IMG/VR virus record: IMGVR_UViG_3300044957_000763
Location: 414,841 to 478,840 of that record
Length of the DNA: 64,000 nt
Direction: 5' to 3' (one strand)
Made by a program: the position numbers and the translations under genes. Of this stretch, positions 56 through 20,108 are shown one piece after another; position 1 is the first letter of the stretch, and the number at the start of each line of letters is the position of its first letter. The notes beneath the pieces were generated by a model. The model saw only the letters and a list, made by a program, of their open reading frames with translations, had not been told where the DNA came from and did no database searches.

Positions 56-820
56 ATGAACAAGCACTGGCCTATTGTTATCTACCCAGAGGTCGCTGCA
101 GCGGCGCTCAAAGCCAAAGTGCACGCCGCATATGCGGTATTCATAATTGTCAAAGTTTATGACTCACACAGAGGTGGTTCAGGTCTTGTATCTATCCGCG
201 AACTTGTCGAGATAGCGCAGAAAACACTTGGCGTTAGCAAAAGCCAGGCATATCGAGTCATTTCAGGTGGTATTGGTGTGTTTTGGAGGGAACCCAGGCA
301 CAAGACCGTGGGTTTGTTTTCTCACCTCAGGGCATATTACAATCTCGGTATTGAAATGTTTTCATCCAAGCCAATTCGTCTAACTGTTGCACAAATTGGA
401 TATGATTCAGAAAATTATAGTGGGTCTTACATTAAAGACCTGATGGTGAGTTGCGTGGCTTCTTGGGACAGCGGTTGTTCGGCAATTGCTGTTGAAACCA
501 TCGCGGAACTTACAGGGATTTCAACCAGAACAATACGGAGACAAATCAAGTATATGTCATGTCGCTCTAGTGGAATTGTCCTTGATGTTTCAACATGTTA
601 CAAAGTAAAGTGCGATAATATCAATCAGACAGAGGCCAACGCACGTGTTCAGCAATTGAATTCAAGCGGGATGGTTAAATATCATTCGGCCCCAAAAGAC
701 GGCAAGTTTGTAATACTTGAAAGAACTGGCAATCTATATAGTTTGAGTGGTGTGGAGCGACTTGGGAGGAGGCGCAGACACAGGCATCTGAAACATGTGT
801 CAAACTGGAGAAAAGACTAA
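56..820 (+). CDS. Putative DNA-binding protein with two HTH-like segments
   Basis: 254 aa ORF with two HTH-like stretches (SIRELVEIAQKTLGVSKSQAYRVI; AVETIAELTGISTRTIRRQIK) and a basic C-terminus; directly upstream of dnaE. Confidence 0.45.
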   Translation: MNKHWPIVIYPEVAAAALKAKVHAAYAVFIIVKVYDSHRGGSGLVSIRELVEIAQKTLGVSKSQAYRVISGGIGVFWREPRHKTVGLFSHLRAYYNLGIEMFSSKPIRLTVAQIGYDSENYSGSYIKDLMVSCVASWDSGCSAIAVETIAELTGISTRTIRRQIKYMSCRSSGIVLDVSTCYKVKCDNINQTEANARVQQLNSSGMVKYHSAPKDGKFVILERTGNLYSLSGVERLGRRRRHRHLKHVSNWRKD

Positions 821-821
821 C

Positions 822-3800
822 ATGTGTAACAGCAAACAGAATTTCGTACATCTGCACAACCACACTTGGTATTCAGTCCAGGACGCATTACCTTCACCGA
901 CTGACCTTGCAATGACCGCAAGAAAGGAGGGTTTTCCAGCCGTTGCTATCACAGACCATGGTCGAATGGGCGGATGTATTGAGTTCTTTGAGGCATGCAA
1001 CAAACCCGTTGACGGGTTAGACCCAATTAAGCCCATTCTTGGTTGTGAAATGTACGTTGTTCCAGACCGGTTTGATAAAGACATGGTCATTGATGAATAC
1101 GGTAACAAGCGAAGGAGAAAGACATGGCACTTGACCATGTTGGCCAAGAACCAAACTGGATACCGTAATCTACTAGCACTAAGCCGTCTTGGTGCAGAGC
1201 AAGACGCTTATCACTATTTTCCTCGAATTGACTGGGACATTATTACCCAGCACAGCGAGGGCGTTATATGCATGAGTGGATGCTTGGGTTCTGAGGTCAA
1301 TCAACAGTTATCTCGAGAAGATATTGATGGTGCAAGAGAGACGATGCGCCGATACAAAGAGGTATTTGGAGATGACTATTATGGTGAATTGCAGTATCAC
1401 GGTATTGATTTACAAAAACACAACTTGCCATTATTGCTTGATTTGTGCAAGGAATTAGACATCAAGACCGCATGCTCTAATGACATACACTATCTACAAA
1501 AAGAGCAGTGGGAACTGCACGATGTCTTGATTCATATGCGCGAATCGCTTACCAAGGATAATTCAGAGGTAAAGGAAAGCGGCAAGCGTGAAGCATACGG
1601 AAGCCACGAATTCTACATGAAAACAGAAGCACAAATGCGCAAGATGTTCGGCAAGGTAGAAGAATGCGTGGACAACACACTTGAAATTGCTGATAAAGTC
1701 GAGAATTTCATGCAAGCCAACGTGCCGCACATGTTGCCCAGTGCAGAGATTCCATTCAATGACCAAATGTTCAATGATTTCAAATCAAAGCACTATCCAT
1801 ACCACAGGCCAAACGAGGCATACTTGGCTTATCTTTCCATCACTGGACTAAAAGCACTTGGTTTAGCTGACAATCCTGTTTACAAGGCACGACTGAAGTA
1901 TGAGTTGACTACGGTCTGGAATATGGGTGTAACTGACTACTTCTTGATTCAGCGCGAGCTGGCTGAATTTATGAAACAGGCGCATATTCGATTTGGTATT
2001 CGTGGTTCTGGGGTCGCGAGCTTAATCAATTACTGCCTTGGAATCAGTGACATTGACCCGGTGCGCTGGAATCTTATGTTTGAGAGATTCCTCAATCCAG
2101 GTCGCGGCACTAAATACAAACTTGAATTCCCAGAAAAGCCAACAAAAGAATGGTTTGATGAACATGGCAAGCAACCTCAAGAAGAGGCGTGTGAAAGAAT
2201 CAAGACTGTTGCTAAGCAAGCAATAGCAGAAAACGCCGAACTCCGGCCGCTACAACCACAAATCCAAAAGGAAATCTGGGCGCTGGAAGGCCAAAAACTA
2301 GCCTCATATGTCTGCGACCTGGCCGATTCTGGTTTCAAAACCGACAAAAACACCCCGAATCTTTGGAGTGCGTATTTCTTGGGTATTACGCCAGAAAAAC
2401 CCAATGGTGATATGGTGGTTGGTCAGGTTGCGACGTTACCTGACGTTGATACTGACATTGATGACCGATATCGAGATACTGCCATTGAGTGGGCAAGAAG
2501 AAGGTTCGGAGACGAACATGTTGCCATTGTTGGTAACTGGGGTACATACGCAATCAAAGCCGCTGTTACTGCTTGTTTGAAGAGCTCGAAGAAGTTCCAG
2601 CAACGATATGGTGAAAAGTCGCATATTGTAGCACAATCAATCTCAAAATCTATTCCGGTTCAACCGGCTCACACGGAAGACCCAGAAGAGCCACTGGAGT
2701 TTGCGATTAAGCAAAACCCTGACTTGAACCAATATGTTAAGCAGTTCCCAGATGAGTTTGAGTCTGCCAGAAGATTGATAGGTGTAGTTTCCAATCTTGG
2801 CGTCCACGCTTCGGCTGTTGTTATTGCAAGCCAACCCATTAACTGGCACACACCACTTGAGCGCTCAAACAAAGGCGTGGTCACAGCCTACGACATGAAT
2901 GATGTTGAAAAGATAGGGATGGTCAAATACGACTTTCTGGGTTTGGCTATGCATCAAAAGATTGAACGTGCTTTGAAGTACATCAAGGAACGACACGGCA
3001 AAGACATTGACTTGCGCAACATTCCAATGGACGACAAAAAGGTCTTAAATCTCTTTAATGAAAAGAAAACCACCACGCTCTTCCAATTTGGCAGTGATGG
3101 CATGAAGGATTCTTTGAGCAAGGTACAAGTTAGCGATGTCGAAGACTTGATTGCCGTTGTGTCTTTGTTTAGACCAGGGCCACTTCAGTTTATTCCTGAC
3201 TATGCGTCATACAAGCGCAATCCTAATACTGTGCGCTATCCGCACGAAATCATCAAGCGACATCTTGGGGTTACATATGGCATTCCTGTATATCAAGAAC
3301 AAGTCATGCTTGTTTGCCGGGATATGGCAAATTTTGACCATGACGAGGTCGATAGCATGCGCAAAGCAGTGTCAAAGAAGAATCCTGTAGCTTTTGAAAA
3401 ATGCTGTAAGTTGTTTAAGGAAAAGGCCACCAAGGCAGGCATTGACGGAAAAATTGTTGACATGACACTGGAAAGCTGGAAGGGATTTGCAGGATACGCA
3501 TTTAACCGAGCGCATGCTGCGTCATATGCCATTTTGGCTTACCGTGGTGCATATCTAAGAGCGTACTATCCTGTTGAGTGGCTCGCAGCGTGTATACAGA
3601 CAGATATTACAGGAAACAAACAAGACAGGGTTGGAGACCATATTCATGAATGTGAATCAGAGCGACCACGAATTGTAGTATCTGGGCCAGATGTTAATAT
3701 ATCTAAACTCGAGGTATCAATTACTGAAAATGATGTCATAGTTCTACCACTCACATATATTAAGGGTATTGGTGCCAATGGATGTGAGTTCATGGACGGT

Positions 3801-4121
3801 GCTCCATACGAAGATGTCAAAGATTTCATCATACGTGGCGAACCGTCAAGAACGATGCTTCGCAACCTGGTAGAATCAGGTGCGCTCAGAAGTTTTCCTG
3901 ACTACAAAGGTGGCGACATTGATAGATTTATGGAACGTGTTGAGCCATATTATGTAGAACTAGACAGTATAAAACGTGAGGCAAAGAAGGCCGAGAAGCA
4001 ACGATACACCTCAATGTCACCATTGCAAAAAACCAGCACTGTAACCGCGAGGCCACTTCGGGCCGCCGGCAAGCCATTTAGGCCTAAGTCTAAGCCATCA
4101 ATTTTAGATAGTTTTGAGTGA
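822..4121 (+). CDS. dnaE: DNA polymerase III alpha subunit (family C), phage-encoded
   Basis: PHP motifs HLHNHTWYSVQD, AITDHG, GCEMY, CSNDIHY; IRGSGVAS; FERFLNP; catalytic PDVDTD; KYDFLGL; GIPVYQEQVM; YAFNRAHAASY. ORF track starts at 795; ATG 822 has GGAG at 807-810 and follows the stop at 820. Confidence 0.97.
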   Translation: MCNSKQNFVHLHNHTWYSVQDALPSPTDLAMTARKEGFPAVAITDHGRMGGCIEFFEACNKPVDGLDPIKPILGCEMYVVPDRFDKDMVIDEYGNKRRRKTWHLTMLAKNQTGYRNLLALSRLGAEQDAYHYFPRIDWDIITQHSEGVICMSGCLGSEVNQQLSREDIDGARETMRRYKEVFGDDYYGELQYHGIDLQKHNLPLLLDLCKELDIKTACSNDIHYLQKEQWELHDVLIHMRESLTKDNSEVKESGKREAYGSHEFYMKTEAQMRKMFGKVEECVDNTLEIADKVENFMQANVPHMLPSAEIPFNDQMFNDFKSKHYPYHRPNEAYLAYLSITGLKALGLADNPVYKARLKYELTTVWNMGVTDYFLIQRELAEFMKQAHIRFGIRGSGVASLINYCLGISDIDPVRWNLMFERFLNPGRGTKYKLEFPEKPTKEWFDEHGKQPQEEACERIKTVAKQAIAENAELRPLQPQIQKEIWALEGQKLASYVCDLADSGFKTDKNTPNLWSAYFLGITPEKPNGDMVVGQVATLPDVDTDIDDRYRDTAIEWARRRFGDEHVAIVGNWGTYAIKAAVTACLKSSKKFQQRYGEKSHIVAQSISKSIPVQPAHTEDPEEPLEFAIKQNPDLNQYVKQFPDEFESARRLIGVVSNLGVHASAVVIASQPINWHTPLERSNKGVVTAYDMNDVEKIGMVKYDFLGLAMHQKIERALKYIKERHGKDIDLRNIPMDDKKVLNLFNEKKTTTLFQFGSDGMKDSLSKVQVSDVEDLIAVVSLFRPGPLQFIPDYASYKRNPNTVRYPHEIIKRHLGVTYGIPVYQEQVMLVCRDMANFDHDEVDSMRKAVSKKNPVAFEKCCKLFKEKATKAGIDGKIVDMTLESWKGFAGYAFNRAHAASYAILAYRGAYLRAYYPVEWLAACIQTDITGNKQDRVGDHIHECESERPRIVVSGPDVNISKLEVSITENDVIVLPLTYIKGIGANGCEFMDGAPYEDVKDFIIRGEPSRTMLRNLVESGALRSFPDYKGGDIDRFMERVEPYYVELDSIKREAKKAEKQRYTSMSPLQKTSTVTARPLRAAGKPFRPKSKPSILDSFE

Positions 4122-4125
4122 TATT

Positions 4126-4806
4126 ATGAGCGAATTAGAAACAGAACCAGTTATTGAAGTTGAAATCCCACAAGATTTCAAATCATTGATTCATGTTGAC
4201 TCAACGGCTTTAATAGCTCATATTATGAGTCTGGATGGAGTTAAAGACTTCAATGAAGAGTTCATGATGTGGCAAGAGTATTTGTCGCGTTTGGAGCCAT
4301 ATGACGACGATACAATTAGTGAAAAATTAAGAAATGTAGACTTAACCAATCTTATGCCACCAGAGCGTAGCAACAGCGTAGACAACGCGTATCAAGCGTA
4401 TTACCGACTTGTTGAAACCCAAAGATACCTTTACAGTCTTCAAAAACCGGTATGGAATAGAGCCGAAATGCTCAAGGATGCCATCAAGTCACTAAGGTCT
4501 GCCGCGAGGGGAATGTTTAAGGGCACAGACAAAGACAAAGAGGCTCACTCAGACAGAATGGTTCGTAATTTTACAGCAGAACTAAGCAGAGCAAAATGTT
4601 TGCTTGGTGCAATCAATTCATCAATTGAAACCGTTGAGTTTGCGGCCATGCAAGCCTCCAGGGTTATCAAGGAAAAAGAATTTGAACTAAAGGTCAATGG
4701 CTCGTATGCTTCTCAGGGTCAGTCAAGTATCTACAATAGACATTTGCAAGCTGAAGAAGAAGACGATGACAGTCCGGTTCCATCAAAATATCGCAGACAA
4801 ACATGA
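4126..4806 (+). CDS. Helical/coiled-coil protein, possibly a UvsY-like recombination mediator
   Basis: Predicted all-helical with an acidic tail; sits just before the gp32-like SSB and RecA. Resemblance to UvsY is by pattern and context only. ATG 4126 preferred over TTG 4114. Confidence 0.35.
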   Translation: MSELETEPVIEVEIPQDFKSLIHVDSTALIAHIMSLDGVKDFNEEFMMWQEYLSRLEPYDDDTISEKLRNVDLTNLMPPERSNSVDNAYQAYYRLVETQRYLYSLQKPVWNRAEMLKDAIKSLRSAARGMFKGTDKDKEAHSDRMVRNFTAELSRAKCLLGAINSSIETVEFAAMQASRVIKEKEFELKVNGSYASQGQSSIYNRHLQAEEEDDDSPVPSKYRRQT

Positions 4807-4819
4807 ATTTCCTGATGCG

Positions 4820-4835
4820 ATGTGCGATAAGTAAA
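4820..4835 (+). promoter_or_regulatory. 16-bp element ATGTGCGATAAGTAAA, copy 1 (ssb leader)
   Basis: Identical copy at 11623-11638. Confidence 0.65.
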
Positions 4836-4982
4836 TTGTAGGCGAAAAAAGTCTACAAAGTCGGCAAGTCGAAGAGATTTCTTCAGAAAATCTTGTATAA
4901 GACTAACGGCACGAAATAGACAGATTAGGAAATGCGGATGAATTCCAAAAGCCATTTCCACTGCACATAGCCAGGAGAAAAC

Positions 4983-5984
4983 ATGTCATATAGCAACACA
5001 AACCAACGCATTGCCCAGGGTCAAATGGGCGGCAACAATCGCAACAGCCTAAAAGATGGCTACGTCGACCTTAAGGTCAGCAAGGATGCAACAGAAAAGG
5101 AAGTTTGCGTCCGTCTCATTGGTCTCCCCTACGCATTTACCCAACATCAGGCTAAGGTGTACAACGAGGAGCTCAAAAAGCGAGTGGATTTTCCATTCCC
5201 AGACCACGACGAAAAGCAAAAGTTCTCAAGAAACTGGCTCAGTCCAGACGCAAAAGATGACCGTTATCCAGACGTCAACCCATGGGCTGAGGCTGGGTAT
5301 CCTGGGTCTCTTCGGTATGCACAAAACGTGCTACTCAGGAATCCTGATGGTTCATTTAGTGTTAAGATTCTTGAGAAGGGCAAGATGCTCTTCGACCAAT
5401 TCACCGACATCGAAAAAATGAACATGCGTCGCAATGAGCAACGCAAGAACAACAACTTGGTCACATGTCTTGGTGGTGAAATCACTCACGACATCTACGT
5501 GCTGGCCCAGTTCAACCCAAAGAAGCCGTTGATTCCAGACCTCAAGGTGTCTCTTGAGACTGAAACCTGCGAAATCACAGATGAAGAAATCGAGGCATTA
5601 AAGAAAATCGGATACCCAACCGAAGAAGAACTCGAAGAGATGTTTGCTCGAGAGCCGTTTCTCGAAGAACTGCCTCGTTGGTTCTGGTATGGTTACCAGC
5701 TTCATCGCATCTACAAGCCAGACCTGTTCCCAGGTTCTGAAGAGGTAACTGGTCGCGCAACTACATCTCGCGGCGAGCTTGATATGAGCAATGCCACGAA
5801 TGATGACGAAGATGAAGAGGAAGCAAAGCCAGCGGCAAGGTCTACTCGTTCATCTTCGACAGCAACCGCCGTGGCTGCAAAACCAGTCTCCAAGCCAGCA
5901 ACCGCCAAGGCACCAAAGGTTGATGAAGAATCAGAGGACGAAAGCGCCTTTGAGTCCGAAGAACCCAGCGAAGACGACTGGTAA
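4983..5984 (+). CDS. gp32-like single-stranded DNA-binding protein
   Basis: 333 aa; YAQNVLLRNPDGSFSVKILEKGKMLFDQF core, Ala/Lys/Pro linker, very acidic tail ending EEPSEDDW; strong RBS (AGGAG); between dnaE and recA. Confidence 0.75.
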   Translation: MSYSNTNQRIAQGQMGGNNRNSLKDGYVDLKVSKDATEKEVCVRLIGLPYAFTQHQAKVYNEELKKRVDFPFPDHDEKQKFSRNWLSPDAKDDRYPDVNPWAEAGYPGSLRYAQNVLLRNPDGSFSVKILEKGKMLFDQFTDIEKMNMRRNEQRKNNNLVTCLGGEITHDIYVLAQFNPKKPLIPDLKVSLETETCEITDEEIEALKKIGYPTEEELEEMFAREPFLEELPRWFWYGYQLHRIYKPDLFPGSEEVTGRATTSRGELDMSNATNDDEDEEEAKPAARSTRSSSTATAVAAKPVSKPATAKAPKVDEESEDESAFESEEPSEDDW

Positions 5985-5998
5985 TCTCGACACAAATC

Positions 5999-6027
5999 TA
6001 AGGGTGCTGTTTCCAACAGCACCCTTA
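5999..6027 (+). terminator. Perfect 13-bp hairpin between ssb and recA (weak U-tract)
   Basis: taagggtgctgtt-tcc-aacagcaccctta. Confidence 0.6.
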
Positions 6028-6050
6028 CTTGCCCAAAATGCACCAAAATT

Positions 6051-7289
6051 ATGTCAAAAAATAACGAAAAGAAAGAAAGCCAAGACTTGGCACAGCGCAT
6101 AGAGGAGCGGAGAAAGGTCGTTGAGGCTCGCCAGAAGAAATTCGGAATCCCAAAGAGTACACTGTTGGTAGGCGGAGAGCACGAGAAGTATGATTTTGTA
6201 CCACTTGGTATTTCAGAAATCGACTCTAAACTCAAAACCAAAGCCATTACCGGAGAAGAGCAATTTGGACTATTGCGTGGCACTATAGTAGAGTTTTGCG
6301 GACCATCTATGTCTGGCAAAACATACGCCGCATATCATTTGGCCAAAGAGCATCAGAAACTTGGTCTTAGGGTACTCTTTGTAGATATTGAGCGCGGTTA
6401 CTATGAACCACGGGCTGTCCAGCTTGGGGTGAATATTGAAGACCCAGACCTTTGGGAAGTCCAGAAGGTTACATTTGCTGCAGGTACAGTTGGCGACTAT
6501 GTCGTTGAATGTGTCAATAGCGGCGATTACGGACTCATTATTGTTGACTCAATTGCCACTCTTATTCCAGATGCTGACTTTGAAAAGTCACTAGAAGACA
6601 ACGCTAAGGTGGGTGCTCACGCCATGTTCATGGGGCAGTTTTTGAGAAAACTTGTCTCGAGCAAAATGGAGGAGAACTTGACCACTGTAGTACTCATCAA
6701 CCAGTTCCGAACAGGTTCTGGTGCCATGCCAAACAGCTTTACAGACAAATCGTCTGGTGGCAAGGCTGTAGAATACTGGTCTCGTATCAGACTGTGGTTT
6801 GCCAGAATTGGCGGCAAAGATGGATGGGTAATAGACGGCAAGGGCAATCGCATTGGTGGTCGGTCTAGATGCACCATTTACAAAACAAAAACCGGAGGTC
6901 AGGACGAAATCGCAGAGTTCCCTGTGTATTTTGTGCCGGCTGACAATGATTTGGTAGGAGAGTTCCTTCACAGGACAATCAACAACAAGGACTTTGAGGG
7001 CATTGTAACACACACTGCACCTCGTGGCAGCCGCGAAAAGCTGTTCCGATATGTTGATGAGACTACTGGTGAACTTATTGCCACACCAAATAAGTATGAG
7101 TTCTGTATTGCGATGATGCACGCTAGTCCTCCCGAAAAGCGGCCGCGTACTGATAAATCAGATACTATGTTTGAGTACATGTGTGCTAGGCTGAAACTTA
7201 AAGAAGACCAGGTGGAAGCACTTGTAGAGCGCATCAAAAACCCGCCTGCTGATGACAATGACTCAGGTCTTGACAGTGAATCAGACTAA
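6051..7289 (+). CDS. recA: RecA/UvsX-family recombinase
   Basis: Walker A GPSMSGKT, Walker B LIIVDSIATL, VVLINQFR, SGGKAVEYWSRIRL. Confidence 0.93.
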   Translation: MSKNNEKKESQDLAQRIEERRKVVEARQKKFGIPKSTLLVGGEHEKYDFVPLGISEIDSKLKTKAITGEEQFGLLRGTIVEFCGPSMSGKTYAAYHLAKEHQKLGLRVLFVDIERGYYEPRAVQLGVNIEDPDLWEVQKVTFAAGTVGDYVVECVNSGDYGLIIVDSIATLIPDADFEKSLEDNAKVGAHAMFMGQFLRKLVSSKMEENLTTVVLINQFRTGSGAMPNSFTDKSSGGKAVEYWSRIRLWFARIGGKDGWVIDGKGNRIGGRSRCTIYKTKTGGQDEIAEFPVYFVPADNDLVGEFLHRTINNKDFEGIVTHTAPRGSREKLFRYVDETTGELIATPNKYEFCIAMMHASPPEKRPRTDKSDTMFEYMCARLKLKEDQVEALVERIKNPPADDNDSGLDSESD

Positions 7290-8037
7290 TGTCAATGGAC
7301 AGTCAATGATGGCATCTTTCTGCCAGTCGCTATCCCGTTCTCAGGGCGGGATGGCATATTTGGCAGAAAGAAACATTCCTGAATCGTTGGTTGAACAAGG
7401 AATGCTCGGATACATACCGCCATATTCCAGTCACTGGTTCCCATTATTGAAGGGCAGGCTAGTTACACCGATTTGCGATGCCACAGGCAACATCAAGGCA
7501 TTGGCAGGAAGACAGTTGCCGTTTGCAAGAGATTCTGTTGCCAAAGCATATCGAGAGTACAACTCAAGCAAACACGCGCAAGAACTGATTGACAAATGGG
7601 ACCGTGCAAAATGGATAAATGAACCATATCCAAAACGCAAACTGCTTTACAACCTGCACCGAGCCAAGAGTTTTGCGCGAGAGCGCGGATATATCAATCT
7701 GGTAGAGGGGTATCTAGACGCAGGGGTTTTGTCGTGTAAGCATATGGAAAACACAGCGGCTTTATGTGGCATCTCGTTAACAGAACATCATGCTGCGATA
7801 ATATCTAGATATTGCGATACCGTTGTGTTGCTTTATGATGGTGACCAAGCTGGTGTAGACGCCGGGGCTGAATCCAGAAGAGTTGCAGAACAATATGATT
7901 TGAAATGTCATGCAGTTTTGTTGCCAACTGGGTGGGACCCTGATGATTTTGTAGTGAAAAAGGGCGGCAAAAATTTACGCCGGGCTATTGAGGGGATGAT
8001 AGAAAGAAATGAGTATGAACTCGAAATCAAAATCTAA
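7252..8037 (+). CDS. dnaG: DnaG-type primase catalytic core (Toprim), lacking the zinc-binding domain
   Basis: YLAERNI, GRLVTPI..ALAGR, KWINEP, LYNLHRAK, LVEGYLD, AALCG, LLYDGDQAG, DPDDF; no CHC2 zinc ribbon. Start position uncertain. Confidence 0.88.
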   Translation: MTMTQVLTVNQTNVNGQSMMASFCQSLSRSQGGMAYLAERNIPESLVEQGMLGYIPPYSSHWFPLLKGRLVTPICDATGNIKALAGRQLPFARDSVAKAYREYNSSKHAQELIDKWDRAKWINEPYPKRKLLYNLHRAKSFARERGYINLVEGYLDAGVLSCKHMENTAALCGISLTEHHAAIISRYCDTVVLLYDGDQAGVDAGAESRRVAEQYDLKCHAVLLPTGWDPDDFVVKKGGKNLRRAIEGMIERNEYELEIKI

Positions 8038-9751: not shown

Positions 9752-9817
9752 TTTTTAGGTCTCTGTATAAACTATCTCCACAGACACTATTAAAGTGTAG
9801 GCGACGCACTGTAGCGT

Positions 9818-10789
9818 TTGGAGATATCAGTGGCAACAAAAACAAAAAGCAACAATGAGACCGTTGCTACGGCATACTATGACCATGCTGAGCTAGAGTC
9901 TAAAATCTTAGCATACCAACAATCTCTTGTGGACAAAGACACAGTTTCACAGGAGCATTATTTCAAGAGCGTTTGTGATATTTACAAACCACATGAGTAC
10001 ATATCTAAGTGGTATGCACATTACAAGCATCTCTATGATTCACTAGAGGACTTCGAACAAGATTACATGCGTGTATTTTGTACCACGCTTGCGGCATGGA
10101 AGCCACGTCATTTACGCAAGCCGTCAAGGTATGGCGGTAAGGGTCATTTTCAGAATTTCTTCTGGGGTGCATTGTCTCACGCATACATTAACGGAGTTAA
10201 GTCAGAGGCTGCTGCTAAACGAAATCTTCAACAACAATGTCCGATATGCGGTGATTGGTGTAATCCTTTATCAACCCACTTGCTCAACAACCACATAGAC
10301 CTTCTGTGGGAGCGATTGAATGAAATGGGATATTCAATGACAGAATTAACTGGATGTCCATTTTGTCGTTCGTTCAAATTACCAAAACGCCAAGGACTTA
10401 GTGATGCAGAGTATAGAGAAAAAATTACTTCAACTCTGCGGAAACATATGGCATCAATGCACAGTTCTGTATTGTTCGAGACATTTCATGAAAAATTTCC
10501 TGAACATCTTACAGTAAGTGCAAAGGCTGTTTCTGTTTATATTCATGACTCAGATAATGAAGAGGAATCAAATGCATATGATGGATTTGAGTCTAGACCA
10601 GGCATAGACAATCTGATGTCGCTAGATTTGACACCACTGCAGATATTGATTATTGAGCGCATTCTAAATGAGGGATTGGTGAATTTACACTATGATGCGC
10701 ATTATGAATGCACAGAAGAAGAATTTCAAGATGCATTGAGCGGTCTGCAAGATGCATTAGTTATAGCCGGCATTGACACGGGTGTATAA
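9818..10789 (+). CDS. Sigma-70 region 2-like protein with two C2H2-type zinc fingers
   Basis: EDFEQDYMRVFCTTLAAWKP...GHFQNFFWGALSHAYINGVK resembles sigma region 2.2-2.4; CPIC-x9-H-x4-H and CPFC...H-x4-H; C-terminal LTPLQILIIERILNEG resembles the start of region 4. Confidence 0.5.
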   Translation: MEISVATKTKSNNETVATAYYDHAELESKILAYQQSLVDKDTVSQEHYFKSVCDIYKPHEYISKWYAHYKHLYDSLEDFEQDYMRVFCTTLAAWKPRHLRKPSRYGGKGHFQNFFWGALSHAYINGVKSEAAAKRNLQQQCPICGDWCNPLSTHLLNNHIDLLWERLNEMGYSMTELTGCPFCRSFKLPKRQGLSDAEYREKITSTLRKHMASMHSSVLFETFHEKFPEHLTVSAKAVSVYIHDSDNEEESNAYDGFESRPGIDNLMSLDLTPLQILIIERILNEGLVNLHYDAHYECTEEEFQDALSGLQDALVIAGIDTGV

Positions 10790-10791
10790 AT

Positions 10792-11562: not shown

Positions 11563-11564
11563 CC

Positions 11565-11604
11565 ATGGTCTGGATGCGCTAATGCGCGATTCAGGCCATT
11601 TTTC
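11565..11604 (+). terminator. Intrinsic terminator upstream of nrdJ
   Basis: atggtctggatgcgc-taat-gcgcgattcaggccat (imperfect stem) followed by ttttt. Confidence 0.6.
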
Positions 11605-11622
11605 ATATATCAAAGCGGCTTT

Positions 11623-11638
11623 ATGTGCGATAAGTAAA
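11623..11638 (+). promoter_or_regulatory. 16-bp element ATGTGCGATAAGTAAA, copy 2 (nrdJ leader)
   Basis: Identical copy at 4820-4835; lies just after a terminator. Confidence 0.65.
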
Positions 11639-11695
11639 AAGAACACAACGCAATAGCGAGCTCGCAATGGAGCAAAAAAAGAAGTGATAAAAACA

Positions 11696-14389
11696 ATGCC
11701 TACAGAATCTGAATCATCAACCCAGTCATATGCGCATCACCCTGTGCCGCAATTTACTATAGCGCAAGTACTTGCAAGTAGTATTGAGTATTTTGGTGGT
11801 GACGAAATGGCCGCCACCACATTCGCCAACAAATATGCACTACAGACCAGTCTTGGTGGTGCTACGCCATATTGTGAACTTAACCCCAACGATATGCATG
11901 ACCGAATTGCTCGAGAATTACATCGTGTAGAGAGCAAATATCCTAACCCAAGAAATTACAAAGAGTTTCGAGATGCCCTTCAGGGGTTTGAGAAAATTGT
12001 ACCTCAGGGTTCTCCAATGTACGGAATTGGCAACCCATACGCTATTGTGTCTTTATCAAACTGTGTTGTTGTAGAAAGCCCAGAAGACAACATGTCGTCA
12101 ATTTTTGAGGCCGGTAAGGAGCTGGCTAATCTCTATAAGCGACGTGCTGGTGTAGGCTTGTCGCTTGATACGTTGCGGCCGGAGAATGCGCCTGTTAGCA
12201 ATGCTGCTAAGGCGTCTACCGGTGCGTGGTCGTTTGCAGATTTCTATTCTAATGTCACAAGAATGGTTGGTCAAGCAGGCCGGCGCGGTGCGTTGATGTT
12301 AACGATGAACATGTTGCACCCAGACGTGCACAAGTTTATTGGCATGAAACAAGACATCAGTAATGTGACCGGCGCTAATGTTTCAGTAATGCTTGGCGAC
12401 TCATTCATGAATGCGGCGACTACGCCTGGTGCGGAATGGATTACCAGATGGTCTCAGGATAAAAATATCCAAATGACCGATGAAGAAGTTGAAGAATTGC
12501 TTGCTCTCGGAGGAGAGTGGGTTTATGCAGGGGTGTCAGTGCCGACATTGCGCGACACTGATGAGGCGCATCCAATCTTGAACACATGGACGTGGAAGTC
12601 ATCCAGTCCTGATTTTCCAAGACTCACTTCATTTAGAAAGTTTGTAGCTTCTGAACTGTGGGAGTTTCTCAATCGTTGTGCCAGAAATACTGCAGAACCA
12701 GGATTGCTTTTCTGGGACAACTATGGCAGAGAACTCCCTGCTAACTATTACCCAGGATTCAAGAGCACGTCTACCAATCCATGTAGTGAAATCGCCCTGA
12801 GCCCATACGACTCTTGTCGATTAACTTCTTTGAACCTTAAAGGATTTGTAAAGAATCCATTTACTCCAGATGCGTACTTTGATTTTGAGGAGTTTTCAAA
12901 TTACGTGCGACTTGGCATGAGGGTCATGGACAACATTGTTGACCTTGAAATTGAGTGCCTGCAGAATATCATTAACATGATATCTGAAGAGGATGAAAAG
13001 GTTCTATGGGGCAAGTTACTTAGTGCCGCAAAGAACGGTCGAAGAACTGGCCTTGGAACGCATGCACTTGGTGACACATTGGCCTGCCTTTGCTTGAGAT
13101 ATGACAGCGATGAGGCGATTGCACAAGTTAACAGCATTTACAATTGTTTGAGAGACAACGCGTATCGAGAAAGCGTAAATCTAGCCAAAGAGCGCGGGTG
13201 CTTCCCGGTTTATGATTGGGAGACAGAAAAGAACTGTCCGTTTATTCAAAGGTTGCCAAGTGACATCAATGAAGATATGAGACAACATGGCCGTCGAAAC
13301 ATTAGCTTGTTGACCAATGCGCCAACTGGTAGCGTGTCTATTGTTTCGCGCACAAGTTCTGGTATTGAGCCGACATTCAGGCACTTCTATGTGCGACGAC
13401 AGAAAATCAATCCAAACGACGCTGATGCTCGAGTGGATTTCAAGGACGCAAGCGGTGATTCTTGGCAACACTTTGATGTGTTTGAGCGCAATATGCAAGA
13501 ATTCTTTGAATTCAATCCAGAAATAAAGGCTAAGTGGAATGAAGTTTATCAGAAGTCACCGCACAAGGATTTTGCTGACAACATGCAGTTCTGGACGGAT
13601 GAACTGAACAAAATCTTGCCAGATTACTTTGTTTATGCAGAGATGATTGACCCGCTTCAGCGAGTTAGATTACAAGGCGTGCTCCAATCATATATTGACC
13701 ACGGTGTTTCATCTACAATCAATATGAACCAAGACGTAACATCAGACTACGTTCGTGGGATTTACGAAGAAGCGTGGCGATGTGGTCTGAAGGGGGTTAC
13801 TGTCTATAGAGACAAATCACGAAGCGGCGTTCTGGTTACCAGTACAGACAGCAAAGCACCAACCGGAATTGTGGAACATGATGCTCCGAAGCGACCGGAA
13901 ATTCTACCGTGTCACATTGAGCGCGCCACAGTAGAAGGTGAAAAATGGACTATCTTTGTTGGTTTACTTGATGGCAAGCCATATGAAATTTTTGGTGGAT
14001 TGGCAGAAAACATTGAGATTCCAAAGAAGTATACTACTGGCTACATTCGCAAACGCAAGTGTGAAAAACGAGAAAACACAGACGAAAATTCTAAGCGAAA
14101 AGCATGTTATGACCTTGTCGCCGGCGACGAAGACGACCCACTGGTTATCAAAGATGTAGTTGTCAACTTCAATGATGACAAATATGGTTGGGGCACCAGG
14201 ATGCTATCGACCATGTTGCGCCACGGTGTACCACTTAAGTACATTGTTGAACAACTACGGCGCAGTTATGCCACATCGTTGCATTCGTTTAACAAGGCCA
14301 TGGCAAGGGTATTGGCAAAATACGACGATGTTGGTGGTATTGGTGAAATCGAAAGACCAGACAACTGCAGAACAGGAAACTGCGAGTAA
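11696..14389 (+). CDS. nrdJ: Class II (adenosylcobalamin-dependent) ribonucleotide reductase
   Basis: SLSNCVV, RRGALM, GANVSV, TNPCSEI, RRTGLG, NAPTGSVS, SGIEP, HGVSSTIN; C-terminal KRPEILPC..GKPYEIF (TSCPD-like) domain; no NrdB-like gene in the window. Confidence 0.88.
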   Translation: MPTESESSTQSYAHHPVPQFTIAQVLASSIEYFGGDEMAATTFANKYALQTSLGGATPYCELNPNDMHDRIARELHRVESKYPNPRNYKEFRDALQGFEKIVPQGSPMYGIGNPYAIVSLSNCVVVESPEDNMSSIFEAGKELANLYKRRAGVGLSLDTLRPENAPVSNAAKASTGAWSFADFYSNVTRMVGQAGRRGALMLTMNMLHPDVHKFIGMKQDISNVTGANVSVMLGDSFMNAATTPGAEWITRWSQDKNIQMTDEEVEELLALGGEWVYAGVSVPTLRDTDEAHPILNTWTWKSSSPDFPRLTSFRKFVASELWEFLNRCARNTAEPGLLFWDNYGRELPANYYPGFKSTSTNPCSEIALSPYDSCRLTSLNLKGFVKNPFTPDAYFDFEEFSNYVRLGMRVMDNIVDLEIECLQNIINMISEEDEKVLWGKLLSAAKNGRRTGLGTHALGDTLACLCLRYDSDEAIAQVNSIYNCLRDNAYRESVNLAKERGCFPVYDWETEKNCPFIQRLPSDINEDMRQHGRRNISLLTNAPTGSVSIVSRTSSGIEPTFRHFYVRRQKINPNDADARVDFKDASGDSWQHFDVFERNMQEFFEFNPEIKAKWNEVYQKSPHKDFADNMQFWTDELNKILPDYFVYAEMIDPLQRVRLQGVLQSYIDHGVSSTINMNQDVTSDYVRGIYEEAWRCGLKGVTVYRDKSRSGVLVTSTDSKAPTGIVEHDAPKRPEILPCHIERATVEGEKWTIFVGLLDGKPYEIFGGLAENIEIPKKYTTGYIRKRKCEKRENTDENSKRKACYDLVAGDEDDPLVIKDVVVNFNDDKYGWGTRMLSTMLRHGVPLKYIVEQLRRSYATSLHSFNKAMARVLAKYDDVGGIGEIERPDNCRTGNCE

Positions 14390-14431
14390 TCAAAACAAGA
14401 GTGCCGGAGCAATCCGGCACTCTTGTTTTGA
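14390..14431. terminator. Bidirectional-type intrinsic terminator after nrdJ
   Basis: 19-bp perfect stem tcaaaacaagagtgccgga-gcaa-tccggcactcttgttttga with a GNRA loop. Confidence 0.85.
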
Positions 14432-14434
14432 ACT

Positions 14435-14441
14435 TGTATAA
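14435..14441 (+). promoter_or_regulatory. TGTATAA -10-like element
   Basis: Follows a terminator; TATAA starts 13 nt before the SD-less ATG 14450; also at 4894, 9764, 10783, 20085, 26655. Confidence 0.5.
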
Positions 14442-14449
14442 AACGCATC

Positions 14450-14890: not shown

Positions 14891-14896
14891 TAATGT

Positions 14897-15388
14897 ATGC
14901 CCAAATCTGAAACAACATATCGAGAATCTGTTAACCTATATACACTTGCTCGTCAATTACAAGAGCGGTATTACATGCATCTTGGATATATTGACATGGA
15001 CGCGATATATTTCGCTGATAAAATTGGGGATAAGCCTCAAAAATCTTCGATAATTGATTTAAGCGGAGTTCGAAGTCAATGGGTGCGTCAAGTTCTTAGC
15101 CACACGTCAAACAATAAATTGTATTGTATTGCGGCTTGGTTTACCGAATGGAGCGAGTTGCCATACAATCAGCAAGAGTGGTTGATGTTTGACACACTGT
15201 ATTCTATTGGTGTTGAAAACGACGGCAAGATGCGTGCTAAAGATGTGTTTGAGCATGGAATTATTGCAGACTTTCTTGGCGTATATTGGCGCAAAGACAA
15301 CGAAATTCCGTCATTGCTCAACTCCAAAGAACCACTGCCAATTCCACCACCGCCTTCGCTTCATGAAGATGAAGGCAGTACTCTATAG
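14897..15388 (+). CDS. Phage metallopeptidase-like protein, apparently lacking the HExxH motif
   Basis: Layout W..l...qq.wl.F-DTLYS-I......m..KDVFEH..I....G.yW matches small phage metallopeptidase-like proteins, but the HELxH position reads DTLYS. Confidence 0.45.
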   Translation: MPKSETTYRESVNLYTLARQLQERYYMHLGYIDMDAIYFADKIGDKPQKSSIIDLSGVRSQWVRQVLSHTSNNKLYCIAAWFTEWSELPYNQQEWLMFDTLYSIGVENDGKMRAKDVFEHGIIADFLGVYWRKDNEIPSLLNSKEPLPIPPPPSLHEDEGSTL

Positions 15389-15454
15389 TCAAGAAGGCAC
15401 AAGTCACTCAAGATATCTGGTATGATACACAGACTGGTATCTTGAGATTTTAAT

Positions 15455-16558
15455 ATGTCTACCACATCACTTTACAACAAATACAGACCATATCAGTTCG
15501 GTCAAGTCAAACAAAACTTCGTGTCGCGAGTACTGCGCTCACAAGTATCAGCAGACAAGTATCCGAATGCATATTTGCTTCAGGGCCCCGCCGGCACTGG
15601 AAAAACCACCCTGGCCAGGATTATGGCGGCCGCTATGCTGTGCGCCAGTCAAAATCAGGATGGTGAACCATGTGGCGAGTGTCAGTCTTGTAAATTAACG
15701 CGCAATGGGAAGAACCGTGATGTCATGGAAGAAAACTGTGCGGACAACAGTGGTATTGACGATATTCGTGCAATCATTGATGAACGATTGCGTATTGCGC
15801 CTTCGATTGGAAAGTACAGAATTTTCATCTTAGATGAAGTCCAGCGACTATCTCGAGATGCGCAGGGCGCAATGCTCAAACACTTGGAGGAACCTCCGGC
15901 ATATGTCAAGTTTTTCTTATGCACAACAGACCCTGAAAAATTGTTGCCTGCTTTGCAAACTCGTTGCCAGAGACATGTATTAAAACCGCTCTCTGAAGAC
16001 GACCTGGTTGATTTGCTCACAGATGTAAGTAACCAAGAAGGCATTGTGTATGACAACGATGGATTGCGCATGATTGCGGAATCATCTCAAGGAAGCGCAA
16101 GGCAAGCCTTGGTATATTTAGAACACGCCGCCACGATTGAGTCTGCCACAACAGATACAGTGGGGCAAGTTCTAGGCAGAGGGCCAGTTGGGTTTTGTCG
16201 AGATTTATTGAATCATGTGATTGATTGTGAAGATGTTGCTATTCTGCAAATGCTAGATGTGGTCAAGACAGAAGGGCTAGACCGGGTTGCAATTGCTTCT
16301 GAATGCCTAAGATTGCTAATGTCAGTACAGCGTGCTAAAACACTTGGTGAGTCTCTGGAAAGCAATCCAATTCTTGAACCATTAGCACAAAAATACAAAA
16401 AGGGTTCAATTAATGCGGTTGCACAATACTTAGTCGAATCTTTGACCCATATGCGTGGGGGTGGCGTTGTAGACGACGCCGTGTTGCAGATGAACTTGTT
16501 GCGTGCGTCTGAGTTTGTGCGTGTTAAACGCGCCGAAGCCGCAACGAAGAGCAAATAA
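15455..16558 (+). CDS. dnaX: Clamp loader ATPase, DNA polymerase III gamma/tau (short gamma-like form)
   Basis: SLYNKYRP, Walker A GPAGTGKTT, zinc module CASQ..PCGECQSC, DEVQ, TRCQ, GSARQAL; 367 aa. Confidence 0.95.
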   Translation: MSTTSLYNKYRPYQFGQVKQNFVSRVLRSQVSADKYPNAYLLQGPAGTGKTTLARIMAAAMLCASQNQDGEPCGECQSCKLTRNGKNRDVMEENCADNSGIDDIRAIIDERLRIAPSIGKYRIFILDEVQRLSRDAQGAMLKHLEEPPAYVKFFLCTTDPEKLLPALQTRCQRHVLKPLSEDDLVDLLTDVSNQEGIVYDNDGLRMIAESSQGSARQALVYLEHAATIESATTDTVGQVLGRGPVGFCRDLLNHVIDCEDVAILQMLDVVKTEGLDRVAIASECLRLLMSVQRAKTLGESLESNPILEPLAQKYKKGSINAVAQYLVESLTHMRGGGVVDDAVLQMNLLRASEFVRVKRAEAATKSK

Positions 16559-16575
16559 ACCTGCAAACAGGACAC

Positions 16576-16612
16576 AAGCACTCATGGTGAGAAAAACTCA
16601 TCATGAGTGCTT
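16576..16612 (+). promoter_or_regulatory. Hairpin covering the start codon of the GNAT gene
   Basis: aagcactcatggtgag-aaaaa-ctcatcatgagtgctt, 16 bp with one G-U pair; ATG 16603 lies in the 3' arm. Confidence 0.55.
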
Positions 16613-17043
16613 GTGATTTTATGAACGACCTTAGTAAGTCATACAACGTTACCAAAGCATACGCACAAACGATTGTATGGATGAATTCAGTTGAGATTAA
16701 CTTTCTTTATGGTCGAGCGCCCAATGTTGTTTATATTGACAGCATTATAGCCAAGCAACCAGGTCAGAAAATGGGCACAATGGCAATCAAAGAACTTACA
16801 TACTACGCAGATAAACATAACGTAGTACTTTGGCTTGAGGTCAAACCAATTCCACACATGTATGGCAATAAGCCGGCATTGACCGAAGACAAGCTAGTTG
16901 AGATATACAAACGATTTGGCTTTAATCAAATTAGTTTCGGGAATCGCACCGAACTAGGTGGATTTATAGACATGCTTAGACATCCAAAATCCGTACAAAC
17001 CCTAACTTTTGAAGTTTTGTGTACAAGTGTTATTACGCAGTAA
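16603..17043 (+). CDS. GNAT-family acetyltransferase-like protein
   Basis: VYIDSIIAKQPGQKMGTMAIKEL (motif A, Q/RxxGxG-like) and LVEIYKRFGF (motif B). Confidence 0.7.
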   Translation: MSACDFMNDLSKSYNVTKAYAQTIVWMNSVEINFLYGRAPNVVYIDSIIAKQPGQKMGTMAIKELTYYADKHNVVLWLEVKPIPHMYGNKPALTEDKLVEIYKRFGFNQISFGNRTELGGFIDMLRHPKSVQTLTFEVLCTSVITQ

Positions 17044-17135
17044 TGCGTATGACCCGAATAACACAGACGACGCCGCCTGCTCTGCGCAGCCGAAGATAAA
17101 TACTGAAGACACTCCGGGTCAAGAGTGGGGTTTAT

Positions 17136-17804
17136 TTGAATTACGACGAAACACGTCTGATGTTATTGGTAAATAGGGCTCGTGGTGGCGACGAAGCGGC
17201 TTTTAATGAATTAATGCGCATTTTTGAACCTGAACTGCGCATGATTGCACAGAGGCTTTATATTGCTGGGTCGGATATTAATGATGTATTGCAAGAAACA
17301 TACATAGGACTCTGGCGTGCCGTCCTTGATTATCGAGACGACGCAGGTACATCATTCCACAACTTCGCCATAAATGTTTGTTGTAAACGCAGGGTCTACA
17401 CTGCCATTAAGGCAAGTAACGGCAAAAAGTTCAAAATCCACAACACGGCTGAAAGTCTTGACAGGTCTATAGTCACAGACGATGACGACAGTGGCCAAAC
17501 CCTGGCAGATTTCATTGTTGACCATAGTCCATCGCCGTTAGATATGATTGTCAACAAGTTAGAATATACGGATAATGTTTCAGAACTGCATTCAAAGATG
17601 ACTGGCATGGAGCAAACTGTATTCGACAGTTTCACAAAAGACCACACTTACGAAGAAATTGGTAAAGAATTAGACATTAAACCCAAAGCAGCAGACAATG
17701 CACTTATGCGCATCAGAAAGAAGGCTGCAAAAATCTACACAGAGTACAATTCAGAAGAACCCAACCCTGTCAAAAAGCCGAGGCGAAAAAACAAGTCAAA
17801 ATAG
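17136..17804 (+). CDS. sigH: SigH (Spo0H)-like RNA polymerase sigma factor
   Basis: ARGGDEAAFNEL, DINDVLQETYIGLWRAVLDY, SFHNFA..CCKRRVYTAIKASNGKK..HNTAESLD, YEEIGKEL..KPKAADNALMRIRKK: close to the SigH pattern (incl. IDNALQRVKRK). TTG start. Confidence 0.85.
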   Translation: MNYDETRLMLLVNRARGGDEAAFNELMRIFEPELRMIAQRLYIAGSDINDVLQETYIGLWRAVLDYRDDAGTSFHNFAINVCCKRRVYTAIKASNGKKFKIHNTAESLDRSIVTDDDDSGQTLADFIVDHSPSPLDMIVNKLEYTDNVSELHSKMTGMEQTVFDSFTKDHTYEEIGKELDIKPKAADNALMRIRKKAAKIYTEYNSEEPNPVKKPRRKNKSK

Positions 17805-17814
17805 CTATTCGAGA

Positions 17815-17823
17815 TGCGATAAT
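17815..17823 (+). promoter_or_regulatory. TGCGATAAT element upstream of dnaN
   Basis: Same core as the 16-bp element; also at 611-619 upstream of dnaE. Confidence 0.5.
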
Positions 17824-20084: not shown

Positions 20085-20108
20085 TGTATAAGTTCACTGA
20101 GGCTTTCA

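What the first reader, a model, noticed from the sequence alone, without database searches (positions are those of the whole stretch)
611..17823. TGCGATAA box, including an identical 16-mer, upstream of the four core replication genes
Seen: ATGTGCGATAAGTAAA is identical at 4820-4835 (ssb leader) and 11623-11638 (nrdJ leader); TGCGATAAT occurs at 611-619 (about 200 nt before dnaE) and 17815-17823 (before dnaN). No shared -35 is visible. It resembles both a TRTG-extended -10 and the sigma-28 -10 element GCCGATAA. Inference: an early/middle promoter class or an operator coordinating the replication genes.
Basis: partly seen in the sequence, partly recalled or inferred. Interest (0 to 1): 0.6.

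Follow-up and report, generated by a model that had tools for sequence, protein, structure and literature searches.

The report
Replication-gene promoter box in huge phage
The TGCGATAA box is most likely the -10 part of a promoter class that switches on about 16 DNA-replication and nucleotide-metabolism transcription units of an uncultivated 479-kb lake-water phage, which encodes four sigma factors and no RNA polymerase that I could detect.

Summary
TGCGATAA occurs 8 times in the window against 2.2 expected, and 36 times in the complete 478,840-bp phage genome against about 15.5 expected.

Sixteen genomic copies are promoter-like. All lie on the + strand, point the same way as the next gene and have a purine just before the box. 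Nine sit 4-9 nt upstream of a start codon with no Shine-Dalgarno. That is the geometry of a -10 element in front of a leaderless mRNA (8 of 36 by the formal test, baseline 1.1%, p = 6e-9).

No -35 element and no dyad symmetry accompany the box. Eleven of 15 annotated downstream genes act on DNA or nucleotides: dnaB, dnaE, ssb, nrdJ, dnaN, two helicases, dCMP deaminase, PRPP synthetase, a DNA methylase and a sigma gene's neighbours. None of 30 genes behind three other -10-like boxes do (p = 1e-7).

The core GCGATAA is kept at the same places in six relatives whose DnaN is 86-51% identical, while the flanks diverge.

The best reading is a -35-independent "replication-class" promoter. It is probably read by one of four phage sigma factors that discriminate C-13/G-12. 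No transcript data exist. It is a new member of a known kind, not a new mechanism.

The parts
610..619 (+). Box (G)TGCGATAAT, candidate promoter for dnaE. It lies inside the 3' part of the HTH-protein gene 56-820.
   Evidence: The same box is in L012 at the same place. CGCGATAAC sits about 240 nt before dnaE in L013. It is absent in L014.
795..4121 (+). dnaE (DNA polymerase III alpha)
   Evidence: Pfam PHP, DNA_pol3_alpha, finger and HHH_6 domains.
4822..4831 (+). Box (G)TGCGATAAG, candidate promoter P1 of the ssb-like gene, in an intergenic region.
   Evidence: Conserved in L012 and L013; degenerate (GCGCGATGAT) in L014. A hairpin follows at 4838-4856.
4894..4901 (+). Second box TGTATAAG (class K), candidate promoter P2 of ssb.
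   Evidence: The block cTTGTATAAGA..CGGCA is conserved in all four genomes.
4983..5984 (+). ssb-like gene.
   Evidence: no family. It is syntenic in L012-L014.
7794..7801 (+). Background copy inside the primase gene, preceded by C.
   Evidence: The DNA motif is kept only in the closest relative. The protein sequence is kept in L007 and L010 but the motif is not.
11565..11604 (+). Intrinsic-terminator-like hairpin plus U-run, about 20 nt upstream of the nrdJ box.
   Evidence: -22.7 kcal/mol, z = -5.4. L009 and L007 have the same layout.
11625..11634 (+). Box (G)TGCGATAAG, candidate promoter of nrdJ.
   Evidence: Relatives read TGCGATAAA (L006, L009), CGCGATAAC (L007) and AGCGATAAC (L011) at the same place.
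11684..14389 (+). Ribonucleotide reductase (nrdJ-like)
   Evidence: Pfam Ribonuc_red_lgC, 4.5e-83.
17136..17804 (+). SigH-like sigma factor (regions 2 and 4), one candidate reader of the box.
   Evidence: Pfam. NCBIfam SigH models at 7.7e-33, below their cut-offs. The best solved structure is 3mzy, a sigma-H factor.
17814..17823 (+). Box (A)TGCGATAAT, candidate promoter of dnaN.
   Evidence: It is the only invariant block in the alignment of 7 genomes (A1). It lies 45-52 nt before dnaN in each.
17867..19018 (+). dnaN (sliding clamp)
   Evidence: Pfam DNA_pol3_beta and beta_2.
20109..20720 (+). ECF-like sigma factor, preceded by TGTATAAG at 20085.
28924..28931 (-). Background copy, antisense inside a gene, preceded by T.
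33050..33057 (-). Background copy, antisense inside the 2502-aa gene, preceded by C.
63079..63086 (-). Copy antisense inside gene 60860-63274, preceded by G. No - strand gene lies downstream, so it is taken as background.

Best explanation
RTGCGATAAK (R = purine, K = T or G) is the -10-region element, positions -16 to -7, of a promoter class that needs no -35 element. Host RNA polymerase core carrying a suitable sigma factor binds it. It melts the DNA at the A of GATAA and starts transcription about 7 nt after the final K.

Where a start codon sits at that point, the mRNA is leaderless; there are 9 such cases in this genome. In the replication module of the window the same box is followed by 45-180 nt leaders.

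The class drives about 16 transcription units, most of them for DNA replication and nucleotide supply. It therefore works as the phage's replication ('middle'-type) regulon.

The invariant C-13/G-12 separates this class from the phage's other -10-like boxes (TGnTATAAT, CATAATA, TGTAYAAR). I infer that one of the four phage-encoded sigma factors reads it, rather than the host's primary sigma.

What is shown: motif excess, geometry, orientation, conservation and functional enrichment. What is inferred: that it is a promoter, where transcripts start, which sigma reads it, and its timing.
For: Excess: 8 copies against 2.2 expected in the window, and 36 against about 15.5 in the genome.

Geometry:
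- 8 of 36 copies have the ATG or GTG of a long ORF 4-9 nt after the hexamer. The baseline is 1.1%, p = 6e-9. A ninth case is at 172021.
- Spacing is 6-7 nt in most, which puts the A of ATG at +1.
- In sigma-28 promoters GCCGATAA occupies -15 to -8 (PMC12784957), which gives the same numbering.
- Start codons are credible. Pfam domains begin within 7-20 residues of them, and orthologues in G001 align from residue 1-4.

Specificity: [ACG]GCGATAA scores 0 of 43 and TG[ATG]GATAA 1 of 44 in that geometry. All 16 promoter-like copies have a purine at -1. All 11 copies with a pyrimidine there are intragenic.

Orientation: all 16 are on the + strand and co-directional with the next gene.

No -35 and no dyad.

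Function: 11 of 15 downstream genes act on DNA or nucleotides. None of 30 genes behind the three other box classes do (plus two genes of those classes annotated). Fisher p = 1.3e-7.

Conservation:
- The box is the only invariant block upstream of dnaN in 7 genomes.
- The core GCGATAA is kept before nrdJ, ssb, dnaE and dnaB in relatives.
- RecD2 and a sigma gene keep the leaderless geometry in G001.
- Box density is about 6-fold higher in the phage part of G001 than in the rest of that assembly.

A terminator lies about 20 nt before the nrdJ box.

The phage has no Pfam-detectable RNA polymerase beta or beta' subunit but has four sigma-like genes.
Against: There is no RNA data: none of the listed runs that hold this DNA is on record as RNA. 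No transcript start has been seen.

One-mismatch neighbours TGCTATAA and TGCCATAA also sit in leaderless geometry. The box could therefore be one end of a single extended -10 family read by one sigma.

Which sigma reads it is untested. One sigma gene (G000 173187) is itself behind the box.

Four of 15 downstream genes (Hsp20, methionine aminopeptidase, two unknowns) are not DNA-related.

The copy for dnaE lies inside a coding region and is missing in the most distant relative.

Gene starts come from a crude ORF caller.
Confidence: 0.75

Rival explanations
1. It is only a sequence variant of the host primary-sigma extended -10 promoter (TGnNATAAT). There is no separate class and no phage sigma is involved. 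The link to replication genes would reflect promoter strength or chance.
For: In this genome every functional copy has TG at -15/-14 and a purine at -16, as in TRTG-extended -10 promoters. TGCTATAA and TGCCATAA occur in the same leaderless geometry. None of the classes has a -35. Extended -10 promoters without a -35 are used by Thermus phage P23-45 and by T4 middle genes (PMC4124052).
Against: G at -12 always comes with C at -13: 16 of 16 sites, against 1 of 44 for TG[ATG]GATAA. The n of TGnTATAAT, by contrast, varies. Relatives keep GCGATAA but lose the TG: CGCGATAAC before dnaB, dnaE, nrdJ and a sigma gene in G001, and AGCGATAAC in L011. Function differs sharply between classes, 11 of 15 against 0 of 30. 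TGCGATAA is not enriched in the bacterial part of G001.
Confidence: 0.17
2. It is an operator: the binding site of a phage repressor or activator, for example the HTH protein 56-820, laid over or beside promoters of replication genes.
For: It is a conserved 9-10 bp box upstream of functionally related genes. An HTH protein gene lies in the module. Some copies lie far from start codons (45-184 nt).
Against: There is no dyad and no second half-site. Orientation is strictly one way. The distance of 4-9 nt to start codons in 9 cases leaves no room for a separate promoter. Its sequence is that of a -10 element (ATAAT).
Confidence: 0.05
3. It acts in RNA, as a 5'-UTR signal for translation, processing or stability.
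For: It lies 6-9 nt before start codons that lack a Shine-Dalgarno. Hairpins follow some copies.
Against: In the window it lies 45-184 nt from start codons that have their own GGAG. No Rfam family matches. The hairpins are not consistent between genes or genomes. The nrdJ copy lies just after a terminator.
Confidence: 0.03

Closest known systems
Sigma-28 (FliA) promoters, -10 element GCCGATAA
   Same: The core CGATAA is identical, with C-13, G-12 and the flipped A-11 in the same register. A GC-containing prefix is read as an extended -10 (PMC12784957). The distance to the transcript start inferred here fits.
   Different: There is no TAAAG-type -35 element. The prefix is TG (or CG or AG in relatives), not GC. 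No FliA equivalog is present; one phage sigma has only a weak FliA/WhiG-like region 2. The regulon is DNA replication, not flagella.
SigX/ComX box (cin-box) TACGAATA of streptococci, read by a sigma-H-family factor
   Same: It is an 8-bp -10-only box, with TgCGAATA variants before ssbB and comGA. It defines a regulon rich in DNA-processing genes and sits 7-30 nt from start codons (PMC6001120). The phage encodes a SigH-like sigma.
   Different: Positions 6-7 are swapped (GATAA against GAATA). There is no upstream T-tract. The link between the SigH-like protein and the box is untested.
Extended -10 promoters without -35 (TGnTATAAT): the Thermus phage P23-45 late promoter and T4 middle promoters
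   Same: Recognition is through a single element. Phages use them to separate temporal classes (PMC4124052). The purine-TG prefix is present in this genome.
   Different: G replaces the near-invariant T at -12, and C-13 is fixed. The TG is lost in relatives. No MotA-like box lies at -30.
Bacillus phage SPO1 sigma cascade (gp28 middle, gp33/34 late)
   Same: A phage without its own polymerase re-programmes host core enzyme with its own small sigma factors. Middle genes include replication functions (PMC13401047).
   Different: SPO1 middle promoters have both -35 and -10 elements of other sequence (my own knowledge). Here the promoter is -10 only and many mRNAs are leaderless. Timing here is unknown.

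Membership tests
Extended -10 (TGn) primary-sigma promoters | TG at -15/-14, one base upstream of the hexamer | tested here: inconclusive
   Present in 16 of 16 functional copies of this genome. Replaced by CG or AG at orthologous sites in G001, L014 and L011.
Extended -10 (TGn) primary-sigma promoters | Hexamer close to TATAAT with T at -12 | tested here: not met
   G is invariant at -12 in all copies and relatives.
Extended -10 (TGn) primary-sigma promoters | Works without a -35 element | tested here: met
   No information upstream of -17. The TTGACA match is at random level. Function itself was not tested.
Sigma-28 / FliA promoters | -10 element GCCGATAA | tested here: inconclusive
   6 of 8 positions are identical (CGATAA); the prefix differs.
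Sigma-28 / FliA promoters | -35 element (TAAAG-type) at fixed spacing | tested here: not met
   No conserved upstream position in 16 sites or in 7 orthologous dnaN regions.
Sigma-28 / FliA promoters | A FliA-family sigma factor is available | tested here: not met
   The best FliA/WhiG hit is 39.9 bits against a cut-off of 189.6, over region 2 only, for the sigma at G000 173187.
SigX/ComX (sigma-H family) box | 8-bp box TACGAATA at -10 with an upstream T-tract | tested here: not met
   5-6 of 8 positions match and there is no T-tract.
SigX/ComX (sigma-H family) box | A sigma-H-family factor is present | tested here: inconclusive
   Window 17136-17804 hits SigH models at 7.7e-33 over their full length, but below the equivalog cut-offs. 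PDB 3mzy, a sigma-H factor, is the best solved match.
Phage temporal-class promoter read by a phage sigma (SPO1 type) | Phage encodes sigma factors and lacks its own RNA polymerase | tested here: met
   Four sigma-like genes; no Pfam hit to beta or beta' core domains.
Phage temporal-class promoter read by a phage sigma (SPO1 type) | A class-specific consensus upstream of a functionally coherent gene set | tested here: met
   11 of 15 against 0 of 30, p = 1.3e-7.
Phage temporal-class promoter read by a phage sigma (SPO1 type) | Transcription depends on the phage sigma and shows a defined timing | not testable with these tools
   No RNA runs hold this phage.
Repressor/activator operator | Dyad or repeated half-sites, with position free relative to the transcript start | tested here: not met
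   Single asymmetric box, one orientation, -10-like spacing.

The most novel reading that the evidence does not exclude
A 479-kb phage runs its programme with four sigma factors of its own on promoters that consist of a -10 box only. Several classes differ mainly at -13/-12 and in the prefix: TGCGATAAK, TGnTATAAT, CATAATA and TGTAYAAR. Many of their mRNAs are leaderless. In this reading the TGCGATAA class is read by a phage sigma with sigma-28-like or SigX-like -10 chemistry, and it forms the replication tier of a cascade. One sigma gene sits behind a TATAGT-type box, one behind the TGCGATAA box and two behind TGTAYAAR boxes.
Probability: 0.4. Interest if true: 0.6.

Novelty: new member of a known kind. 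Interest (0 to 1): 0.45.

Why it matters
Huge phages are known almost only from metagenomes, and their gene regulation is largely unread.

This work gives a compact, conserved box with a clear regulon, and a matched set of four phage sigma factors. Together they make the transcription programme of such a phage directly testable in vitro, by combining core polymerase with each sigma and each box class.

The box also offers a way to predict replication-tier genes and true, often leaderless, start codons in this lineage.

It also shows how two bases of a -10 element could separate promoter classes.

The mechanism itself is not new.

Tried and rejected
- Exact 16-mer scan of viral contigs: 5 unrelated hits, taken as chance.
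- The search for related loci with DnaN in viral contigs: nothing. The genome search does not draw relatives for a virus record.
- The 'phages' collection: no near DNA match, and DnaE relatives are below 35% identity.
- Sequencing runs: the 10 listed holders are DNA metagenomes, none on record as RNA. Laying four of them gave identical fragments and no variants, so there is no information on microdiversity or transcripts.
- The standard -35/-10 scan is not enriched: 40 found against 35.5 expected.
- Rfam: no match in 1-22000.
- Leader folding: the ssb leaders of two lineages begin with a hairpin, but the dnaN and nrdJ leaders show nothing consistent.
- DnaA box (TGTGnATAA): rejected by eye, because the box has one extra base and most copies lack TGTG.
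- Literature search for the bare motif returned primer noise.
- P0006's contig could not be fetched.
- Host promoter test in G001: TGnTATAAT-N5-7-ATG occurs only 3 times, all in the phage part. It says nothing firm about host promoters.
- The copy at 7794 and the three - strand copies in the window were judged background.
Full report
**What the window is.** The window is the last 64 kb of a single 478,840-bp contig (G000:C1:414841-478840). IMG/VR classes it as a complete virus record with direct terminal repeats. G+C is 44.5%. Its DNA is held by lake-water metagenome runs and one freshwater-sediment run. None of the listed holders is on record as RNA.

The region of the finding is a replication module:

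| Window coordinates | Gene |
|---|---|
| 795-4121 | DnaE |
| 6051-7289 | RecA-like protein |
| 7252-8037 | Toprim primase |
| 8009-9751 | RecJ |
| 11684-14389 | Ribonucleotide reductase |
| 15455-16558 | Clamp loader |
| 17136-17804 | Sigma factor with regions 2 and 4 |
| 17867-19018 | DnaN |
| 20109-20720 | Second sigma-like protein |

DnaB lies just upstream of the window (G000 412423-414021).

**The observation.** The window has 8 copies of TGCGATAA against 2.2 expected, and no shuffle out of 100 reaches 8. The genome has 25 on the + strand and 11 on the - strand, against about 15.5 in total under an order-3 Markov model.

**What separates functional copies from background.** I placed all 36 genomic copies against a simple ORF map. 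Sixteen are promoter-like: all lie on the + strand, point the same way as the next gene, and sit in an intergenic stretch or at the very end of the preceding gene.

Every one of these has a purine just before the box, and T or G follows in 14 of 16. All 11 copies with a pyrimidine before the box lie inside genes. The remaining 20 copies match the chance expectation.

In the window, 611, 4823, 11626 and 17815 belong to the functional set. Copy 7794 is preceded by C. Its DNA motif is kept only in the closest relative, while the encoded peptide is kept without the motif in more distant ones. It and the three - strand copies are background.

**Geometry.** This is the key result. In 8 of the 36 copies, the ATG or GTG of a long ORF lies 4-9 nt after the hexamer GATAAK. 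Only 1.1% of genome positions have this property (p = 6e-9). A ninth case was found at 172021. The spacing is 6 or 7 nt in most.

These genes have no Shine-Dalgarno in that short space. Their start codons are credible: Pfam domains begin within the first 7-20 residues, and orthologues in a relative align from residue 1-4.

This is the geometry of a -10 element in front of a leaderless mRNA. With the last A of the box at -8, the A of ATG falls at +1. The solved sigma-28 open complex places GCCGATAA at -15 to -8, which is the same register (PMC12784957).

The full box is needed:
- [ACG]GCGATAA scores 0 of 43.
- TG[ATG]GATAA scores 1 of 44.
- GATAAK without TG is at baseline.

No -35 element exists. 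No upstream position carries information, and matches to TTGACA are at random level. There is no dyad and no second half-site.

**The genomic setting.** The box is one of several -10-like boxes with the same geometry:

| Box | Copies in leaderless geometry |
|---|---|
| TGnTATAAT | 13 of 55 |
| CATAATA | 16 of 91 |
| TGTATAAR | 9 of 27 |

Leaderless genes behind -10-only promoters therefore look common in this phage. The only one-mismatch neighbours of the box found in that geometry more than twice are TGCTATAA and TGCCATAA.

**Function.** The genes behind the 15 annotated functional copies are:
- a UvsW-like helicase;
- a RecD2-like helicase;
- dCMP deaminase;
- a sigma factor;
- Hsp20;
- methionine aminopeptidase;
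- PRPP synthetase;
- a C5 DNA methylase;
- DnaB, DnaE, the ssb-like gene, the reductase and DnaN;
- two genes of unknown function.

Eleven of the 15 act on DNA or nucleotides. As a control I annotated 28 genes behind the three other box classes and added two in the window. None is a replication or nucleotide gene. They include an amidase, a glycosyltransferase, an RNA ligase, an HTH protein and many unknowns. Fisher's test gives p = 1.3e-7.

**Conservation.** A protein search with DnaN found relatives at 97% down to 51% identity. I fetched six syntenic contigs.

- **dnaN.** The box is the only invariant block in the alignment of seven genomes. It lies 45-52 nt before the gene, while the flanks have diverged.
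- **The reductase gene.** The site reads TGCGATAAA in two relatives, CGCGATAAC in one and AGCGATAAC in another.
- **ssb.** The box is kept in two relatives and is degenerate in the most distant one.
- **dnaE.** The box is kept in one relative, is CGCGATAAC in another and is absent in the third.
- **dnaB.** The box lies 15 nt before the gene both here and, as CGCGATAAC, in the 62% relative. A 51% relative has it too.
- **RecD2 and a sigma gene.** In the 62% relative both keep the leaderless geometry, 6 and 7 nt before GTG.
- **dCMP deaminase and PRPP synthetase.** These have other boxes in the 62% relative.

The conserved core is therefore GCGATAA, and the TG prefix is specific to the closer lineage. 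In the assembly that holds the 62% relative, 24 copies lie in about 550 kb of phage-like sequence and 23 in the other 3.25 Mb.

**Transcription-unit context.** A strong hairpin with a U-run lies about 20 nt before the reductase box. The same layout is seen in two relatives. This fits a new unit starting at the box.

The ssb-like gene has a second conserved box, TTGTATAAGA, about 85 nt before its start in all four genomes. It therefore probably has two promoters of different classes.

**Who reads it.** Pfam finds no RNA polymerase beta or beta' domains in the genome. The phage does have four sigma-like genes:

| Location | Closest family |
|---|---|
| G000 173187 | Region 2 like SigB/F/G and weakly FliA |
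| G000 316232 | Weakly SigI-like |
| Window 17136 | SigH-like over its full length; the best solved match is a sigma-H factor |
| Window 20109 | ECF-like |

C-13 and G-12 are fixed while the prefix drifts. The function of the class is also sharply distinct. For these two reasons I favour a dedicated phage sigma over the host primary sigma. CGA-type -10 cores are typical of alternative sigmas such as sigma-28 and the streptococcal SigX box.

I cannot say which of the four it is. The sigma at 173187 is itself behind the box. The one at 316232 is behind TGGTATAGT. The two in the window are behind TGTAYAAR boxes. That arrangement looks like a cascade, but this is inference only.

**Rivals.**
- A plain variant of the host extended -10 remains possible (about 0.17).
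- An operator is unlikely, because the box is asymmetric, one-way and at -10 distance.
- An RNA signal is unlikely, because in the window it lies 45-184 nt from start codons that have their own GGAG, and one copy follows a terminator.
- Chance is excluded.

**Comparison and novelty.** It works like a class-specific phage promoter in a sigma cascade of the SPO1 type. It also works like single-element promoters such as the P23-45 late promoter and the SigX box.

It fails the membership tests for canonical extended -10 promoters (G at -12), for sigma-28 promoters (no -35, no FliA) and for the SigX box (sequence differs, no T-tract).

It is a new consensus within a known kind of system. The limits of the work are the lack of any transcript data, an unknown host, and gene starts taken from a crude ORF caller.

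Noticed in passing
window 4894, 9764, 14435, 17020, 20085, 42525 (+ strand): A second box, TGTAYAAR, sits before ssb (as a second promoter), ORF 9818, ORF 14450 (7 nt before ATG), both sigma genes of the window, and ORF 42540 (7 nt before ATG). Genome-wide, 9 of 27 TGTATAAR copies are in leaderless geometry.
   Followed up: partly
window 17020-17135; L006-L011 at the same place: The SigH-like sigma gene is preceded in all seven genomes by a terminator, then TGTACAAR or TGTATAAA, then a leader of about 110-150 nt with hairpins at matching places but different sequence. It may be a regulatory leader. There is no Rfam match.
   Followed up: partly
G000 173187-173756, G000 316232-317089; window 17136-17804 and 20109-20720: There are four sigma-like genes, each behind a different box type, and no Pfam-detectable RNA polymerase subunits. 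This suggests a sigma cascade.
   Followed up: partly
L007/L013 = G001:C5 (JAFDWS010000002.1 of GCA_018268375.1, 1.36 Mb): A 62% relative of this phage occupies roughly the first 550 kb of a contig labelled Armatimonadetes bacterium. The rest of the contig carries 11 ABC-transporter genes. It is either a very large prophage or a chimeric contig. If real, it is a lead to the host phylum.
   Followed up: partly
window 22290-25409: The terminase-like gene (MJ0330_N) is 1039 aa here but 702-703 aa in three relatives. The 1038-aa versions elsewhere carry LAGLIDADG and Hom_end hits. An intein is likely. The UvsW-like helicase at G000 79975 also has a Hom_end hit.
   Followed up: no
window 16573-17043: ORF 16603-17043 (146 aa, no family) lies between the clamp loader and the sigma gene. 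It is absent from all six relatives. A 19-pair hairpin spans its start.
   Followed up: no
whole genome G000; window 9386-9393: GC-rich palindromic words (GGCCCCGG, TCCGGGGC, GTCCCGGA) occur 39-70 times each against 3 expected, mostly between genes. They look like terminator-type repeat hairpins. Only one related copy lies in the window.
   Followed up: no
window 14886 and 20733; G000 196-265 kb, - strand: The CATAATA box lies 5 nt before ATG of many small genes of unknown function, clustered on the - strand. From memory it resembles the sigma-F/G type -10 of Bacillus; I did not check this.
   Followed up: no
window 7794-7822: The background copy in the primase gene is followed by a 7+7 palindrome (AATATCT/AGATATT) and a second TGCGATA. 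It lies in coding sequence and was not examined further.
   Followed up: no
window 4100-9900: Fragments identical to the window occur in contigs of four other runs, one of them a 2019 freshwater-sediment metagenome. The same genotype therefore recurs across samples.
   Followed up: no
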